The translations under genes were made by a program, and so were the position numbers. Below, piece by piece: positions 5,692-25,320 of a DNA stretch of 64,000 nt (its first letter is position 1; each line of letters opens with the position of its first letter). The DNA is taken from positions 248,001 through 312,000 of IMG/VR virus record IMGVR_UViG_3300045971_000577. The stretch is one strand, 5' to 3'. Below the pieces are notes generated by a model. That model did no database searches, was not told the origin of the DNA, and saw nothing but the letters and a program-made list of their open reading frames with translations.

Positions 5692-5777
5692 TGGTGCCCC
5701 CTGGGAGACTCGAACTCCCAATGCCTTGCGGCGCCAGAACCTAAATCTGGTGCGTCTACCAATTTCGCCAAAGGGGC
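5692..5777 (-). tRNA. tRNA-Leu(TAG), long variable arm
   Basis: Loop TTTAGGT; GCC-GCAA-GGC variable arm; CCA. Confidence 0.95.
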
Positions 5778-6550: not shown

Positions 6551-6849
6551 TTAAATGAATCTCCCCACATCAAAATCAACATGGTCGCATCGCTTTCCTT
6601 CTTGAAGAAGATTTCAGCGAAGTACATGGGGTTGTCAAGGTATTCGCGAATATAGAATTCGCCCTTGAAAGTTGTTTGCAACCACTTTGTAATCTCTACC
6701 CAATTCTCTGGTTGCTGAATAGCAGTGAATTTGATTGCGTAGGGAGACTTCACCGGCAACTTGGACAAGTCGGTAATCCAATATTTGGCAGGAGGAGAAT
6801 CATCCTTGCCTGCAACGGGATCAGACAGATTGTGCAATATGGAGGTCAT
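6547..6849 (-). CDS. Hypothetical protein
   Basis: ORF track, trimmed to ATG 6849. Confidence 0.6.
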   Translation of the reverse strand: MTSILHNLSDPVAGKDDSPPAKYWITDLSKLPVKSPYAIKFTAIQQPENWVEITKWLQTTFKGEFYIREYLDNPMYFAEIFFKKESDATMLILMWGDSFK

Positions 6850-7569: not shown

Positions 7570-7644
7570 TGGTGCGTCTGGAGGGAATCGAACCCTCGTC
7601 ATAGGATTTAGAATCCCGTACTCTAACCGCTGAGCTACAAACGC
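7570..7644 (-). tRNA. Amber suppressor tRNA (anticodon CTA)
   Basis: GCGTTTG/CAGACGC acceptor, ACCA; anticodon arm CGGGA-TTCTAAA-TCCTA; anticodon at 7609-7611. Confidence 0.85.
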
Positions 7645-7653
7645 GAATTTAAT

Positions 7654-7761
7654 GATGTGATCGAAGACGCTACTCTCCGACCTTGCCGCTGCCAACCTTA
7701 TAAATAGATGGCCTCGGATGCTCTTTCGAGCAGTGAATGTGCGCTTTACACTAATCACATC
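7654..7761 (-). ncRNA. Candidate ~108-nt structured RNA upstream of the suppressor tRNA
   Basis: Closing stem GATGTGAT/ATCACATC; TGCTC-GAAA-GAGCA; TCCGA/TCGGA. Confidence 0.5.
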
Positions 7762-7769
7762 GTATGTAC

Positions 7770-7797
7770 ATTATACAGTCATACTACTGCACGTCAA
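7770..7797 (-). promoter_or_regulatory. Sigma70-type promoter driving the small RNA and suppressor tRNA
   Basis: TTGACG-N16-TATAAT. Confidence 0.6.
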
Positions 7798-8111
7798 TCG
7801 GCGTGATTGTACAATTTCCACTTCTTGAAGAAGTTGCGATCTCGATTCTCAGTAATAGGCTGGGTGCAGATAGCACTATATCTCATTCCGTTATCAGGTT
7901 CATAGAACATGTAATATTGGATTCCACGTTCTTCCAGCTTCTCAGCAATGGATGCCAGATCATTCTCATCTTTGGCAGACAACAGGATCAAACTCGAAAT
8001 CCCCTAATTGTCCTGGAACTTCTTGCCTGCTTCATAACAGGCGTGCCCGATTTGAACGATCCTTTGAGCATGAGAAATATCCTCACGAATGAATGTGTAG
8101 ATGTAGCTCAT
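7794..8111 (-). CDS. Pth2-like peptidyl-tRNA hydrolase interrupted by an in-frame TAG (8004-8006)
   Basis: MSYIYTFIREDISHAQRIVQIGHACYEAG...N*GISSLILLSAKDE...FYEPD...SAICTQP; one frame on both sides of the TAG; ATGA-coupled start. Confidence 0.75.
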
Positions 8112-8470
8112 TTGAATGCTTCCTTACGAAGTTCTTGTGCAATCTTCCAGACAGCATCTTGCTCCGACGGAGTAAGCCAACTGTATAACACCGATCCGCG
8201 AACAGACCAGAGTGCGCTATTCAGCGAACCGAATGGTGCTGCACCGTTATCGAGCTTGACTTTGTTAGTGATGGGGAAGAATGACTTACGCAGACGTGAC
8301 TCAGCACCTTCGAGACCTTCGCCCCTCATAACGGAACGATAGATGCACAAAGCGGCAATATCAGCACTGGTAATGTTACGGAGAGCAGCTCGTGCTTTCC
8401 ATTTTGCCCGAGTGTCCGTGAAAACGGGTTGGGACTTTTCTTCGGTAACTTGATTTGTAAAACTAAACAT
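8108..8470 (-). CDS. Hypothetical protein
   Basis: ORF track; AAGGA RBS. Confidence 0.75.
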   Translation of the reverse strand: MFSFTNQVTEEKSQPVFTDTRAKWKARAALRNITSADIAALCIYRSVMRGEGLEGAESRLRKSFFPITNKVKLDNGAAPFGSLNSALWSVRGSVLYSWLTPSEQDAVWKIAQELRKEAFK

Positions 8471-9969: not shown

Positions 9970-10554
9970 TTAGGTGCTACCCTGTGTAGCATTACTATTT
10001 ATATTTTTACAAAATCGTTCATGCCTTTTTATGTTACAAAATATTATGTTCTTCTTACCGCACCTAACGCATTCTATATATTTGGTGGGGCGAGATCTAT
10101 TAGAACATGCCTTAGAACAATAATATTCGTTGTATTGTCTTTTATCTCCTTTTGTAAAAATCTTAGAGAATGATACGCCGCAATAGCAGGTATACCTATT
10201 TGTTACTCTTTCTATTCGGCGCCCTAACAAAGATCTCTTAGCGATATGCGCTGCGGATTGTTTATACCCCGAAGTTCCTTCGCCACCGTCTGTTTTATTT
10301 CGGAGAATACCTGTACCAATATCTATTCGACCATACCACTGAATCATTCTGCGTTCAATCGCGAATGCACCTAACTCGGTGAGATTATTTTCTAATATCA
10401 ATATTAATGATTTATCCGGCGGTTGTATATGCTCGGTGCGGCTCTTTAGGTAAGCCCTGTTTCCCGAACCTTTACCGATATAATACGGTGTTCCGGCCTT
10501 TGCCGTTCGTGAATCTACTTTTCGTAAATACGCATAAACATAAAATGTTGTCAT
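9970..10554 (-). CDS. GIY-YIG-like homing endonuclease
   Basis: FYVYAYLR...TPYYIGKG; NKTDGGEG. Confidence 0.85.
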
Positions 10555-10670
10555 TATTGCTCCTTATTAAGAAACAATAACACTTTCAAACGGTACACTG
10601 ACTAAGTACCCATTGATTAAAGTCAGTTGGCGTTATCGCTCAATATTTATCTCAATGTCGAGACATACAT

Positions 10671-12952: not shown

Positions 12953-13203
12953 GTTTTCAAACTAACCTAAACGAACTGTTTGCATCCGGTAACCCATATG
13001 CGGTGGCAATAGCAGAGAAGATAAAGAATATCGACGATGCGTATGCTAATAAACTCATCACTGCGGATGAAGCTAAAGACCTTCTCAACGATATGAAAAC
13101 GGAAGAAGCATTAGTTGATCTTGCCAACAATTTGCAAATAAAACTCTATGTTCAGCAAACAATCGATAAGTTGATATTTCTTGTCGAGAATGTGATTTTT
13201 TAG
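12949..13203 (+). CDS. Hypothetical protein coupled to the lipoprotein
   Basis: ATGA overlap. Confidence 0.7.
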   Translation: MSFQTNLNELFASGNPYAVAIAEKIKNIDDAYANKLITADEAKDLLNDMKTEEALVDLANNLQIKLYVQQTIDKLIFLVENVIF

Positions 13204-13208
13204 TCATA

Positions 13209-13234
13209 AGAATAGGAACCGAAGTTCCTATTCT
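13209..13234. terminator. Hairpin terminator between convergent units
   Basis: Perfect 11-bp stem with a UUCG loop on the minus strand. Confidence 0.75.
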
Positions 13235-13500
13235 GGATTTTCTGTTGCCAGGCATTCCTGCCCCGTGGTTTACCGCTTTTTAGGCAGCAAGAGCCTCAGT
13301 GTAAAACGAATCATTTGCGTTTACTTTTTGTTTTCTTCGATTTACGGTCGTTGCTCACCGAGCGATAAGAAGCCTACTCAATACCCAGGCGATTCCGGAT
13401 CGGGCCCATAACTAAAACTTCACAAAAGGCTTAGTGGTGGACCCGGGGGGATTCGAACCCCCTTGTTGAATGTCTTTCTGTTTCCTACTTTACGCTGTTA
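13235..13500 (-). ncRNA. ssrA: Circularly permuted (two-piece) tmRNA
   Basis: Acceptor piece (T-arm, CGGGTCC-ACCA ending 13435) lies upstream of the 5' end GGGCCCG (13407); tag ANDSFYTEALAA* at 13280-13318; G3:U70; outer ends approximate. Confidence 0.85.
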
Positions 13501-13620
13501 TTTTCCTTAATTCTGATTCATAATAGTGTAGCAGACCTACAATAGTCATACGATCAAATCTGTTACCGTATCCTAAATGCCGTCTGTAGTAATCAATCTG
13601 TGATTCAATAAATGATTTAC

Positions 13621-14046
13621 TCATGATAGCTTCTGACTCTTTACGATACGTCTAAGTTCGAGTTCTGTGTCTCGCTTCTTTTCCGTAGCTCGTTTGTCGT
13701 ACTCTTTCTTACCCTTTGCAAGTCCAATCGAGAGTTTGTATTTACCTCTCGTTGAATAAATCTTCAACGGCACAAGAGTTAGTCCACGTTCCTTTGTCTT
13801 ACCGATGAGACGTTGGATTTCTTTCTTATGCAAAAGCAACTTACGCGAACGGGTCATATCGTGCTCGGAGCCACCGATGTTAGCGCCCACAAGCATGATG
13901 TTACCATCCATAACTACGCAGTGAGTTCCGGCGATTGAACAGCTCTTAGCCGCAATCGCCTTTACTTCCCAGCCTTCCAGCTTCATTCCACACTCGTATT
14001 GCTCGAGTATTTCATAATCAAAGAAGGCCTTCTGATTTGAAATCAT
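13621..14046 (-). CDS. smpB: SsrA-binding protein
   Basis: [52 protein letters not shown]. Confidence 0.95.
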
Positions 14047-14876: not shown

Positions 14877-15545
14877 TTACCACATAAGGTCAAAGAAACC
14901 GCGTAACACCTTGTTAACGCTTCCTGTCTTTCCGCTGTTGTGATCCTTTACAACATCGTCTTGAAAACGGTATGTTTGTATCTTATCCCCGCGCATGCCA
15001 GAACCAACCTGTTCTTTGCGGCTTGAATCTAGCGCGAACTTGTGCTCTCTATGTGCGTGTGCGTTTAGTGCCTCTAGCAGGGCTTGCTTCGCCTGATCTT
15101 GGCTATTTTGCCTGGATCGACACTGTGCCGTGGCAGTTTGGCCTGTAGGCAAATACGTTATACGACACGAATTTTGATGTTTGTTGCGGTGTTGGCCGCC
15201 TGCGCCAGTACCGCTGTACCATTCTATTCTAAAATCCGAGTCTTTGAATTCGATATTACGCAATTCGGGATCAGTGATCGCAACTGTTACGGTGCTGGTA
15301 TGAACTCTGCCCTTGCGCTCGGTTGGTGGAATACGCTGTATGCGGTGCCCACCTGCTTCTTTCTCTAACTGTGATAAGTCTGCACCCTCAACTTCTATGA
15401 AAAGTTCTCCGGGGAGATTCCTTATCACGCGATTGATTCAGCCAACTCTGTCAAAGTGGCGTTGGTATGCTGCTGCAAGATCTACAGTGAATAGCTTGCT
15501 GTCTTCTCCGCCCTCAGCTGCGCGTATTTCAATAATTCTTTTCAC
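14877..15545 (-). CDS. prfA: RF1-type class I release factor interrupted by an in-frame TGA (15438-15440)
   Basis: GGAGA RBS + GTG; IIEIRAAEGGEDSKLF, HRIQRIPPTERKGRVHTS (PxT), GAGGQH (GGQ), IQTYRF. Confidence 0.85.
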
Positions 15546-15731
15546 ATTTATCTCCAAATTTTACTAAAAAAGCCAAATAGTCCGATTCTTCGGAAAATTT
15601 GTATACAGAATCTCCCTCAGACGTCCATCGTATCCATTTACCATCTTCCCAGGACCCGATAGTAACATAGCACCACTCGAATGCATCATTAGATGCAATT
15701 CTATGTTTGTTTGATATAAAAGCTTTGTATT

Positions 15732-17764: not shown

Positions 17765-17840
17765 TGGTACCCCACGCGGGATTCGAACCCGCACACTCGG
17801 AGTTTAAGACCGATACGACTGCCAATTACGTCAGCGGGGC
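17765..17840 (-). tRNA. tRNA-Leu(TAA), short variable loop
   Basis: Loop CTTAAAC; CCA. Confidence 0.88.
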
Positions 17841-24413: not shown

Positions 24414-24489
24414 TGGTACCCCATATGGGATTCGAACCCATACACTCAGTGTTTGAGACTGATACGACTGCCAATTACGTCAACGGGGC
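24414..24489 (-). tRNA. tRNA-Leu(CAA), short variable loop
   Basis: Loop CTCAAAC. Confidence 0.88.
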
Positions 24490-25244: not shown

Positions 25245-25320
25245 TGGTACCCCAGATGGGATTCGAACCCACACACCTACGGTCTAAACGTAGTACGACT
25301 GCCAATTACGTCACCGGGGC
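25245..25320 (-). tRNA. tRNA-Leu(TAG), short variable loop
   Basis: Loop TTTAGAC. Confidence 0.88.

What the first reader, a model, noticed from the sequence alone, without database searches (positions are those of the whole stretch)
7570..8111. Peptidyl-tRNA hydrolase with an in-frame UAG directly upstream of an amber suppressor tRNA
Seen in sequence: a Pth2-like frame (8111-7794) with both halves intact around a TAG at codon 36 (8004-8006). About 150 nt downstream lies a tRNA with anticodon CTA under its own sigma70 promoter. TAG still ends other genes here (4343, 5821, 13203). Established: Pth recycles peptidyl-tRNA released by stalled or aborted ribosomes. Inference: the hydrolase is produced only when amber codons are read through, by the phage suppressor or through loss of host RF1. 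This gives a conditional switch paired with the UGA-gated RF1.
Basis: partly seen in the sequence, partly recalled or inferred. Interest (0 to 1): 0.83.

Follow-up and report, generated by a model that had tools for sequence, protein, structure and literature searches.

The report
Stop-gated tRNA hydrolase beside suppressor tRNA
A giant phage carries a small tRNA-hydrolase gene interrupted by a stop codon right next to a tRNA that reads that stop, and the same pairing recurs across dozens of unrelated giant phages, pointing to an undescribed switch in which a viral tRNA controls whether its neighbouring gene is made.

Summary
A 105-codon Pth2-fold gene (8111-7794, minus strand) has one in-frame TAG (8006-8004). 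A tRNA with anticodon CTA (7644-7570) lies 149 nt downstream, behind an 11/12 sigma-70-like promoter.

The TAG is neither a lesion nor genome-wide recoding:
- A diverged relative (L108) keeps TAG at the same codon, and the part after it looks constrained (14 synonymous, 11 non-synonymous changes).
- At least three independent internal TAGs arose in this clade.
- In 39 of 56 homologue clusters from other large phages, the gene starts Shine-Dalgarno, ATG, one to four codons, then a stop (37 TAG, 2 TGA).
- The two TGA cases sit beside a tRNA-TCA rather than a tRNA-CTA.
- A suppressor tRNA lies within 10 kb in 40 of 56 clusters, at a median of 720 nt.
- Surrounding genes use the standard code.
- A second gene, HD-like, adjacent to or fused with the first in other lineages, carries the same matched stops.

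Best reading: the neighbouring suppressor tRNA gates synthesis of the hydrolase. What the enzyme does is inferred from its fold only. I found no description of this pairing in the searched literature, and public annotations hold only fragments of unknown function.

The parts
8007..8111 (-). N-terminal 35 codons of the Pth2-like gene. The ATG at 8111 overlaps the upstream gene's TGA. Carries the family motifs R-x-D and Q..HA.
8004..8006 (-). In-frame TAG (codon 36), followed by G. It lies in the loop between helix 1 and strand 2.
   Evidence: Same codon in L108. The same loop carries TAG in L109, L088, L090, L093/94/102, L105 and L014. Loop position from the model.
7794..8003 (-). C-terminal 69 codons of the Pth2-like gene plus its TGA stop (7796-7794). 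Carries the F-x-E-P-D motif.
   Evidence: Against L108 this part has 14 synonymous and 11 non-synonymous differences.
7770..7797 (-). Sigma-70-like promoter TTGACG-16-TATAAT, placed to transcribe the tRNA.
   Evidence: I read a -10-like hexamer (TATAAT or TAAAAT) in the matching intergenic stretch of L021, L022, L024 and L025; no promoter scan was run on them.
7648..7764 (-). Structured 117-nt leader between the promoter and the tRNA, closed by the stem GAUGUGA/UCACAUC. Function unknown.
   Evidence: -39.4 kcal/mol, z -3.8. Shared with L023 at the same place and with L002 after its tRNA. No Rfam match.
7570..7644 (-). Amber-suppressor tRNA: anticodon CTA, G1-C72, A73, encoded CCA, short variable loop.
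   Evidence: Conserved next to the gene in every clade relative that has flanking DNA. Not a recent copy of any other tRNA in the window.
8108..8470 (-). Upstream 120-aa gene, translationally coupled to the Pth2-like gene. Unknown function; likely partner.
   Evidence: always directly upstream. Homologous to the N-terminal part of P0147, a fusion with the Pth2-like domain (E 2e-8).
14877..15557 (-). RF1-type release-factor gene lacking domain 1, with an in-frame TGA at 15440-15438. Context: same translation-termination neighbourhood.
   Evidence: prfA models best; PPT and GGQ motifs. The TGA is conserved in L002.
13189..14046 (-). SmpB gene (14046-13621) and tmRNA gene (13528-13189). Context: a phage ribosome-rescue set 5-6 kb upstream.

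Best explanation
The gene encodes a small Pth2-fold hydrolase whose synthesis is gated by the suppressor tRNA encoded next to it. Ribosomes reaching the UAG either terminate through RF1, giving a useless 35-residue fragment, or accept the phage tRNA(CUA) and finish the 105-residue protein. Output therefore follows the ratio of charged suppressor tRNA to RF1 activity.

Shown by sequence comparison:
- The stop is conserved.
- It recurs independently in this gene family.
- It matches the anticodon of the neighbouring suppressor tRNA.
- It occurs in genomes that otherwise use the standard code.

In most lineages the gate sits at codon 2-6, directly after a Shine-Dalgarno sequence and ATG. The window's clade lost that leader: the gene is coupled to the upstream gene through ATGA. 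Several of its lineages instead carry TAG at permissive internal sites.

Inferred, not shown: the enzyme cleaves the ester bond of peptidyl- or N-blocked aminoacyl-tRNA. Tying its synthesis to suppression would then scale tRNA-recycling capacity to the by-products of suppression, namely drop-off at contested stop codons and stalls after read-through. This would work alongside the phage's own RF1-like factor, SmpB and tmRNA.

The confidence given (0.72) is for the statement as a whole. Taken alone, the suppressor-dependent gate is about 0.85, and the proposed recycling role of the enzyme is about 0.45.
For: Anatomy.

Fold and family.

Conservation of the TAG:
- L108 has TAG at the same codon despite 39 codon differences, 25 of them synonymous. 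Downstream of the TAG there are 14 synonymous and 11 non-synonymous changes.
- The window and L108 are sisters, and L019 and L110 are sisters that share another TAG site.
- L109 is not grouped with the window pair but sits on a long, unresolved branch, so its loop TAG probably arose separately.

Family-wide gate:
- All 12 lineages examined in GenBank phages begin M-x(-x)-TAG. They include GAP32, CBB, BF, ME3, RsoM2USA, XacN1 and RAS14.
- 39 of 56 IMG/VR clusters have the leader stop: 37 TAG, 2 TGA, 0 TAA. Shine-Dalgarno-like purine runs precede most leaders, the start is ATG in 40 of 44, and a purine follows the stop in 43 of 44.

Covariation and linkage:
- Both TGA leaders sit beside a tRNA-TCA. 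Of the TAG leaders, 29 have a tRNA-CTA within 10 kb and none has a tRNA-TCA (Fisher P 0.002).
- A suppressor tRNA is within 10 kb in 40 of 56 clusters, at a median of 720 nt, and on the same strand in 38 of 40.
- CBB and ME3 have annotated tRNA-CTA genes nearby. RsoM2USA and XacN1 have them according to PMC8504454 and PMC5852040.

Not recoding.

Second gated gene with matched stops.
Against: - Nothing here is experimental. No peptide spanning the stop, no charging data and no enzyme assay exist.
- The amino acid inserted is unknown. The tRNA has G1-C72 and A73, unlike the window's Gln tRNAs.
- The lysine of the Pth2 'GK' motif is not evident in the family alignment, so hydrolase activity is not assured.
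- The window's protein has Arg where its clade has an invariant Gly (GMGYS to GMRYS).
- Eight of thirteen sequenced lineages of the window's clade have no stop at all. The gate is therefore dispensable there, and the internal TAG could be a tolerated change rather than a selected one.
- Eight leader-TAG clusters showed no suppressor tRNA within 10 kb. At least one of these (L033) is an ARAGORN miss.
Confidence: 0.72

Rival explanations
1. Negative-feedback homeostat. The Pth2-like enzyme, and in other lineages the HD-like partner, act on the suppressor tRNA itself by deacylating it or altering its 3' end. More active suppressor then makes more of its own inactivator, which caps read-through in the infected cell.
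For: The gated genes are almost always the nearest neighbours of the suppressor tRNA. Both gated proteins resemble enzymes or domains that handle tRNA 3' ends: the Pth2 fold, and for the HD-like partner a best structural match to tRNA nucleotidyltransferase entries. Only these genes appear to be gated, not late or structural genes.
Against: No evidence on substrate specificity. Clade members without any stop still keep the gene beside the tRNA, so the feedback would be absent there. Tuning the promoter would be a simpler way to limit the tRNA.
Confidence: 0.15
2. Tolerated nonsense change. In the window's clade the internal TAG is a neutral mutation that survives only because an efficient suppressor is transcribed next door. 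It has no regulatory value.
For: The TAG sits in a variable, indel-prone loop. Most clade members lack a stop. The clade has lost the start-proximal gate seen elsewhere.
Against: No other plausible TAG-split gene was seen in about 54 minus-strand ORFs of the window. Internal TAGs arose at least three times in this 105-codon gene, and two were kept through divergence. The same loop carries a second TAG in five or more distant lineages. No TAA, TGA or frameshift lesion was seen in any clade member.
Confidence: 0.12
3. Pseudogene or sequencing error. The gene is dead, or the TAG is an assembly artefact.
For: There is a single assembly of this genome. There is one non-conservative change at a clade-invariant Gly.
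Against: The same TAG is present in an independent sample (L108). Substitutions downstream of the TAG look constrained (14 synonymous, 11 non-synonymous over 69 codons). There are no other lesions. The family-wide pattern of matched stops also argues against it.
Confidence: 0.02
4. Genome-wide TAG reassignment (code 15 style). The phage reads TAG as a sense codon in many genes, and this is just one of them.
For: A suppressor tRNA-CTA is present. At least one public gene call already translates the TAG as Q (P0002).
Against: Treating TAG as sense raises ORF coverage no more than treating TGA as sense, in the window and in most of the 50-odd related loci. Genes of 595-1457 aa have no TAG. Seven window genes end in TAG. 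The release factor encoded is RF1-type, not RF2.
Confidence: 0.03
5. Mini-ORF with re-initiation. The short ATG-x-x-stop is a separate upstream ORF, and the ribosome restarts just after it without any suppressor. For the window, the two halves would be made as separate peptides.
For: The codon after the stop is ATT, ATC, ATG or GTG in 19 of 44 clusters. In the window a TTG lies 4 codons after the TAG.
Against: In 25 of 44 clusters the next codon cannot initiate (AAC, GTT, GAA and others). Re-initiation does not explain why the stop is TAG in 37 of 39 cases or why it switches to TGA exactly where the neighbouring tRNA is TCA. Splitting the fold between helix 1 and strand 2 would not give a domain.
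Confidence: 0.04

Closest known systems
Archaeal and eukaryotic peptidyl-tRNA hydrolase 2 (Pfam PF01981; e.g. AF2095 3ERJ, MJ0051 2ZV3, human Bit1 1Q7S, S. solfataricus 1XTY)
   Same: Same alpha/beta fold and size (TM 0.60-0.75). Shares the N-terminal R-x-D-L ... Q..HA motif. The HMM passes the cut-off in several family members.
   Different: Very divergent: 14-19% identity, and a profile search of PDB sequences finds nothing. The 'GK' lysine is not apparent, and an invariant E-P-D takes the place of the D-A-G-x-T region. Found in phages of bacteria, next to suppressor tRNAs, and interrupted by a stop codon.
Stop-codon recoding in phages: TAG- or TGA-recoded crAss-like, Lak and other gut phages, with a suppressor tRNA plus a release factor (bioRxiv 10.1101/2021.08.26.457843; PMC9523058)
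   Same: A phage-encoded suppressor tRNA lets in-frame stops be read, and the stop is proposed to act as a regulator of expression.
   Different: In those phages, dozens of late, structural and lysis genes are recoded and coding density under the standard code collapses. Here the genome is standard-code. Only one or two specific small genes beside the tRNA carry the stop, usually at codon 2-6. The release factor encoded is RF1-type although the suppressed codon is UAG.
prfB (RF2) autoregulation by an in-frame UGA (programmed +1 frameshift); from general knowledge
   Same: An early in-frame stop in a translation-termination or recycling gene makes its synthesis depend on how efficiently that stop is recognised.
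   Different: prfB needs a frameshift and senses its own product. Here the frame is unchanged, and the sensed quantity is a separately encoded suppressor tRNA competing with RF1.
Lambda bar minigenes and pth(ts) sensitivity; from general knowledge
   Same: A Shine-Dalgarno sequence, ATG, one or two codons and a stop is literally a minigene, the class of element that produces short peptidyl-tRNAs, which are the substrate of Pth.
   Different: The bar minigenes are free-standing and toxic when Pth is low. Here the minigene-like leader is in frame with, and continuous with, a Pth-like gene.
Synthetic suppressor-tRNA feed-forward gates (PMC7969014)
   Same: Same logic: a target gene carrying an amber codon is expressed only when a co-regulated suppressor tRNA is present.
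   Different: Those were engineered in E. coli. This would be a natural and widespread counterpart.

Membership tests
PTH2 (Pfam PF01981) | Profile match at or above the curated cut-off (23 bits) | tested here: met
   The window's pieces alone fall short: C-terminal piece 15.4 bits, N-terminal piece no hit. Full-length relatives pass: 23.2 and 23.3 bits, and 28.0, 25.3 and 25.1 bits. All belong to one family with the window protein.
PTH2 (Pfam PF01981) | Pth2 alpha/beta fold | tested here: met
   Model of the nearest homologue has pLDDT 81 and pTM 0.75. The top 13 PDB matches are all Pth2 proteins, with probability 1.00 and TM 0.60-0.75.
PTH2 (Pfam PF01981) | Catalytic residues (Lys of the GK motif and the Asp of D-A-G-x-T, recalled from S. 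solfataricus Pth2 mutagenesis) | tested here: inconclusive
   Invariant family residues are Y6, R10, D12, Q21, H24, E72 and P73, with D74 nearly invariant. R-x-D-L and Q..HA line up with the Pfam consensus by eye. No conserved Lys occupies the GK position. No residue-level structural superposition was available.
PTH2 (Pfam PF01981) | Hydrolysis of peptidyl-tRNA | not testable with these tools
   Needs an enzyme assay or complementation of a pth(ts) strain.
tRNA (Rfam RF00005), amber suppressor | Cloverleaf matching the tRNA model, with anticodon CUA | tested here: met
   66.9 bits against a 29-bit cut-off. ARAGORN gives anticodon cta at position 34. The CTA anticodon is kept in all clade orthologues.
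tRNA (Rfam RF00005), amber suppressor | Aminoacylation and decoding of UAG in vivo | not testable with these tools
   Indirect support only: conserved in-frame TAGs next door, and stop-anticodon covariation.
TAG-recoded (code 15 type) phage genome | Many genes with in-frame TAG, and low coding density under the standard code that is restored by reading TAG as sense | tested here: not met
   ORF coverage in the window is 0.77 under the standard code, 0.85 with TAG as sense and 0.87 with TGA as sense (the control). Related loci behave the same way. Seven window genes end in TAG. No other gated gene was found in the window.
TAG-recoded (code 15 type) phage genome | Phage RF2 to keep UGA and UAA termination while UAG is reassigned | tested here: not met
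   The phage release factor is RF1-type: prfA models 143-145 bits against prfB 87 bits, with PPT and GGQ motifs.
Programmed, conserved stop-codon read-through gene | The in-frame stop is conserved among diverged homologues, with coding constraint downstream | tested here: met
   Window against L108. L019 against L110. Leader stop in 39 of 56 clusters.
Programmed, conserved stop-codon read-through gene | A full-length read-through product is detected | not testable with these tools
   Needs proteomics or a reporter assay.

The most novel reading that the evidence does not exclude
Large phages carry a self-contained 'suppressor cassette'. It consists of a stop-codon suppressor tRNA plus one or two enzymes that act on tRNA 3' ends (Pth2-like, HD-like). 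The mRNAs of those enzymes carry, usually at codon 2-6, the very stop that the tRNA reads. The enzymes act back on the suppressor tRNA or its products, forming an autonomous feedback circuit. That circuit sets how much stop-codon read-through an infected standard-code cell experiences. It would be a natural genetic-code rheostat, and the long-sought target of the 'orphan' suppressor tRNAs of jumbo phages.
Probability: 0.3. Interest if true: 0.92.

Novelty: new variant of a known kind. Interest (0 to 1): 0.86.

Why it matters
Suppressor tRNAs have been noted repeatedly in standard-code jumbo phages without any known target. The XacN1 authors looked for targets and reported finding none (PMC5852040).

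This analysis names a target that is conserved, sits beside the tRNA and matches its codon. XacN1's own ORF364 is one example. It also shows that databases hold the gene only as fragments of unknown function: phrog_34073, GAP32_397, and unannotated gaps in BF and RsoM2USA.

If confirmed, this is a natural gene-specific amber or opal gate that works in ordinary bacteria. It would show how phages tune or cope with stop-codon suppression without changing their whole code, and it may represent a stage before full recoding. It would also supply natural suppressor-tRNA and leader pairs for synthetic biology.

The idea is directly testable in cultured phages (CBB, GAP32, BF, ME3, RsoM2USA, XacN1).

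Tried and rejected
- Megablast of 4 kb around the gene against GenBank phages found nothing.
- A profile search of PDB sequences found no Pth2; only the fold comparison did.
- Two alignments were too diverse for the search for related loci. Narrower ones worked.
- Blastn with the ME3 suppressor tRNA did not find the suppressors of other phages.
- An all-against-all BLAST screen for read-through sites in homologous loci was swamped by shadow frames, with similar numbers for TAG, TGA and TAA. It could only show that the Pth2-like gene stands out, with 7 supporting homologues.
- I first took P0002 as an intact homologue with Gln at the TAG position., 92 showed that its DNA has TAG and the Q is a gene caller's convention. 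So the inserted residue cannot be read from that record.
- Pairwise comparison with the window's 33 other tRNAs gave no parent, so the tRNA's amino-acid identity could not be assigned.
- NCBIfam has no model for the family.
- The Atlas search for the upstream partner gave only weak leads.
- The motif GTGATTAGTGTA is not a repeated regulatory word; it occurs once in the window.
Full report
**1. What is in the window**

Genes in this window run on the minus strand. An ATG at 8111 overlaps the TGA of the preceding 120-aa gene (ATGA). It opens a frame of 35 sense codons, then TAG at 8006-8004, then 69 sense codons, then TGA at 7796-7794.

149 nt further on lies a 75-nt tRNA with anticodon CTA at 7644-7570 (ARAGORN; Rfam tRNA 66.9 bits). 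A TTGACG-16-TATAAT promoter-like site at 7797-7770 overlaps the gene's stop codon.

The window belongs to a 369,145-bp metagenomic phage contig. It carries 33 tRNA genes, a tmRNA, SmpB and a release-factor-like gene.

**2. What the protein is**

- The C-terminal piece gives only a weak Pfam PTH2 hit (15.4 bits).
- Relatives reach or exceed the 23-bit cut-off: 23.2 and 23.3 bits, and 28.0, 25.3 and 25.1 bits.
- A model of the nearest homologue (pLDDT 81, pTM 0.75) matches only Pth2 structures in its 13 best PDB hits (3ERJ, 2ZV3, 1WN2, 1Q7S, 1RLK, 1XTY), with TM 0.60-0.75.
- The family is large: 1,521 representative clusters at E <= 1e-3.
- Its invariant residues are Y6, R10, D12, Q21, H24, E72 and P73.

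It is a divergent Pth2-fold family. Whether it keeps peptidyl-tRNA hydrolase activity cannot be decided from sequence, because the lysine of the canonical GK motif is not evident.

**3. The TAG is not an accident**

*A correction to my own first reading.* The closest 'intact' protein, P0002, shows Gln at position 36. Its DNA (L108, an independent sequencing run) has TAG at that codon. The tool flags that the locus does not translate to the stored protein. The Q is therefore a gene caller's convention, not evidence for Gln.

*Conservation and constraint.* The window and L108 differ at 39 codons, 25 of them synonymous. Downstream of the TAG there are 14 synonymous and 11 non-synonymous changes. 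My hand estimate from these counts is a dN/dS of about 0.25; no formal calculation was run. The stop has therefore persisted while the sequence after it stayed under constraint.

*Independent gains within the clade.*
- L019/L026 and L110 share a TAG at another site (..IA[TAG]ML.. and ..IE[TAG]KL..).
- L109 has a TAG in the same loop as the window.
- In a maximum-likelihood tree the window and L108 are sisters, and L019 and L110 are sisters. L109 lies apart on a long, unresolved branch.
- That makes at least three gains, two of them retained through divergence.
- Eight other sequenced lineages have no stop: L002, L021-L025, L111 and L112.
- No member shows a TAA, a TGA or a frameshift.

**4. 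The pattern outside this clade**

*Cultured and GenBank phages.* In GenBank phage records the homologous region is either unannotated (BF, RsoM2USA, the Yersinia and several Erwinia phages) or annotated as a truncated piece, such as GAP32_397 at 77 aa. In all 12 lineages examined, the conserved frame begins with ATG, one or two codons, then TAG:

| Phage(s) | Leader |
|---|---|
| BF | MTH-TAG |
| GAP32, CBB | MAQ-TAG |
| Kaldavass, XbC2 | MAH-TAG |
| fHe-Yen9 phages | MSH-TAG |
| RsoM2USA | ML-TAG |
| ME3 | MT-TAG |
| LR756511 | MTH-TAG |
| LR756501 | MS-TAG, plus a second TAG in the loop |
| XacN1 ORF364, RAS14 (long fused forms) | MK-TAG |

*IMG/VR scan.* A scan with an alignment of these proteins returned 80 loci, which group into 56 clusters at 80% identity.
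- 39 clusters have this leader: 37 TAG, 2 TGA, none TAA. The chance of 37 of 39 being TAG is about 2e-20 if TAG were a quarter of stops.
- Shine-Dalgarno-like purine runs precede most of the leaders.
- The start codon is ATG in 40 of 44, and the commonest leader is two codons.
- The base after the stop is a purine in 43 of 44. From memory, that is the context that favours suppression in E. coli.

*Second TAG.* Five further lineages carry a second TAG in the loop after helix 1, the same loop as the window's TAG (L088, L090, L093/94/102, L105, L014).

*Hidden cases.* Many 'full-length' database proteins begin M-x-Q-[I/V/N]. One that I checked, P0076 (MLQI...), is ATG TTG TAG ATT in its DNA, with a tRNA-CTA 27 nt upstream. 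The true frequency of the leader is therefore probably higher.

**5. Link to the suppressor tRNA**

- All clade relatives with flanking DNA have a tRNA-CTA immediately downstream.
- Across the 56 clusters, a suppressor tRNA lies within 10 kb in 40. The median distance is 720 nt, and 23 lie within 1 kb (P = 1.6e-13 against uniform placement). It is on the same strand in 38 of 40.
- It is the nearest tRNA in 19 of 26 multi-tRNA loci, against 9.5 expected.
- At least one 'missing' case (L033) has a tRNA-CTA with C33 that ARAGORN skipped.
- CBB and ME3 have annotated CTA tRNAs 3.7 kb and 0.45 kb away.
- RsoM2USA and XacN1 have them according to their genome papers (PMC8504454, PMC5852040).
- Four contigs binned as bacterial MAGs show the same pairing.

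The decisive point is covariation. The two clusters whose leader stop is TGA (L045, L096) have a tRNA-TCA 273 and 339 nt upstream and no tRNA-CTA. The 29 TAG-leader clusters with a detected suppressor all have CTA (Fisher P = 0.002).

**6. Not genome-wide recoding**

- Reading TAG as sense raises ORF coverage no more than reading TGA as sense, in the window (0.77 to 0.85 against 0.87) and in most of the related loci.
- The window's large genes (595-1457 aa) are uninterrupted.
- Seven of 54 minus-strand ORFs end in TAG.
- A scan for the leader architecture found no other case in the window.
- By my inspection, the other same-frame TAG-split pairs listed lie inside longer ORFs in other frames, under tRNA genes, or are short.

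**7. A second gated gene**

The same scan across related loci found a 185-195-aa family (motifs HG.SV, HDCGKP, HFP.HA, FGG..S.SFKIK).

*Location.* It lies directly after the Pth2-like gene or is fused to its N-terminus (XacN1, RAS14, L050, L091).

*Matched stops*:
- Leader TAG in RsoM2USA, L036, L051, L063, L077, L079 and L103.
- Leader TGA in L075 and L080; L075 has a tRNA-TCA.
- A conserved internal TAG in the GAP32/BF/CBB group and in L037-L039.
- GenBank annotates the GAP32-group gene as fragments.

*Fold.* It is a weak Pfam HD match. Its model is confident (pLDDT 95.6). The best structural matches are tRNA nucleotidyltransferase entries (3WFO, 3WFP, 3WFR; TM about 0.6, E 3e-3), followed by HD phosphohydrolases. 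This is a lead, not an assignment.

*Absence here.* The family is not in the 64-kb window.

**8. Mechanism**

*Shown by comparison.* A stop codon matched to the neighbouring suppressor tRNA is maintained inside these genes.

*Inferred.* The suppressor decodes the stop in competition with RF1, so protein output follows suppressor activity. The start-proximal position would make failed attempts cost only a di- or tripeptide. The window's clade has replaced that leader with translational coupling to the upstream gene. Some of its lineages carry TAG at permissive internal sites instead.

*More weakly inferred.* The enzyme recycles peptidyl-tRNA produced as a by-product of suppression. This fits the nearby phage RF1-like gene, SmpB and tmRNA.

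*Rival.* A feedback loop in which the enzymes act on the suppressor tRNA itself fits the tight linkage equally well and cannot be separated from the main model here.

*Unknown.* The amino acid inserted is not known. The tRNA (G1-C72, A73) is not like the window's Gln tRNAs (U1-A72, G73). At the helix-2 TAG site, two relatives have Gln (CAA) and others have E, R, M or Y.

**9. Literature**

- Full-text searches found no paper that links a Pth2-like gene to a phage suppressor tRNA.
- Work on recoded phages describes genome-wide recoding of late genes, with suppressor tRNA, aaRS and release-factor modules (10.1101/2021.08.26.457843; PMC13037316).
- The XacN1 paper reports that in-silico read-through of its 18 amber stops revealed no target. 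It looked past the ends of genes, not at their starts.
- PHROGs holds the pieces as families of unknown function: phrog_34073 (77 aa), phrog_14850 and phrog_26054.

**10. Verdict**

The finding extends to a widespread cassette that appears undescribed. All of this is in silico. The gate itself is well supported, and the enzyme's role is a hypothesis.

Noticed in passing
Related loci, e.g. L005:1701-2267, L004:2280-2858, L075:11016-11606, L013:329-1189; not in the window: A second gene family (HD-like, 185-195 aa), adjacent to or fused with the Pth2-like gene, carries the same suppressor-matched in-frame stops (leader TAG or TGA, or a conserved internal TAG). GenBank annotates it as fragments in GAP32, BF and CBB. 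Its best structural match is to tRNA nucleotidyltransferase entries.
   Followed up: partly
window 15557-14877 (-), TGA at 15440-15438: An RF1-type release-factor gene (PPT and GGQ motifs) lacks domain 1 and has an in-frame TGA. The TGA is conserved at the same position in L002 at about 70% identity. From my recollection of the E. coli RF1 sequence, it falls where release factors have the Trp of a conserved 'GW'. The window has no tRNA-TCA.
   Followed up: partly
window 8470-8108 (-): The 120-aa gene whose stop overlaps the Pth2-like start is always directly upstream in the clade. It is homologous (E 2e-8) to the N-terminal part of P0147, a 244-aa protein fused to the Pth2-like domain. This suggests a functional partner. 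There are no Pfam, PHROG or Atlas assignments.
   Followed up: partly
window 7764-7648 (-); also L023:~6700-6835 and L002:~10500-10630: A conserved structured RNA-like element of about 117 nt, closed by the stem GAUGUGA/UCACAUC (-39.4 kcal/mol, z -3.8). It lies between the promoter and the suppressor tRNA in the window and in L023, but after the tRNA in L002. No Rfam match.
   Followed up: partly
P0002 / L108:1788-2105; P0076 / L114:142-564: Some public protein records translate in-frame TAG as Q, so they look intact. Many family representatives begin M-x-Q-[IVN] and are probably such cases. Homologue alignments built from protein databases can hide stop codons.
   Followed up: partly
L024:10359-10433: ARAGORN calls the orthologous suppressor tRNA in this relative with an 8-nt anticodon loop ('ctaa'). 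This could be a quadruplet-type loop or an alternative fold.
   Followed up: no
L053, L057, L058, L076, L105 (within 0.3-3 kb of the gene): Two or three tandem, diverged tRNA-CTA genes sit beside the gated gene in some lineages.
   Followed up: no
window 17765-17840, 24414-24489, 25245-25320 (-): Three paralogous 76-nt tRNAs with Leu anticodons (TAA, CAA, TAG) lack the long variable arm expected of bacterial tRNA-Leu. A normal 86-nt tRNA-Leu(TAG) is also present at 5692-5777.
   Followed up: no
window 8003-7797 (-), codon 77: The window's protein has Arg (AGA) where all close relatives have Gly in the GMGYS motif; L108 has GGA. The position varies in the wider family, so the effect is unclear.
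   Followed up: partly
window 4080-2966 and 5692-4630: Two stretches of 1.1 kb lack called genes in the source annotation, apart from tRNAs. One holds a 195-aa ORF (3539-2952) that follows a TAG directly and runs into tRNA-Pro. No leader-type architecture was seen there.
   Followed up: partly
L081:~8760 (tRNA-TTA) and L081:10001-10291: One lineage has an ochre-type tRNA (anticodon TTA) 1.2 kb upstream of a Pth2-like gene that has a normal start. The gene-tRNA linkage may therefore extend to all three stop codons.
   Followed up: no
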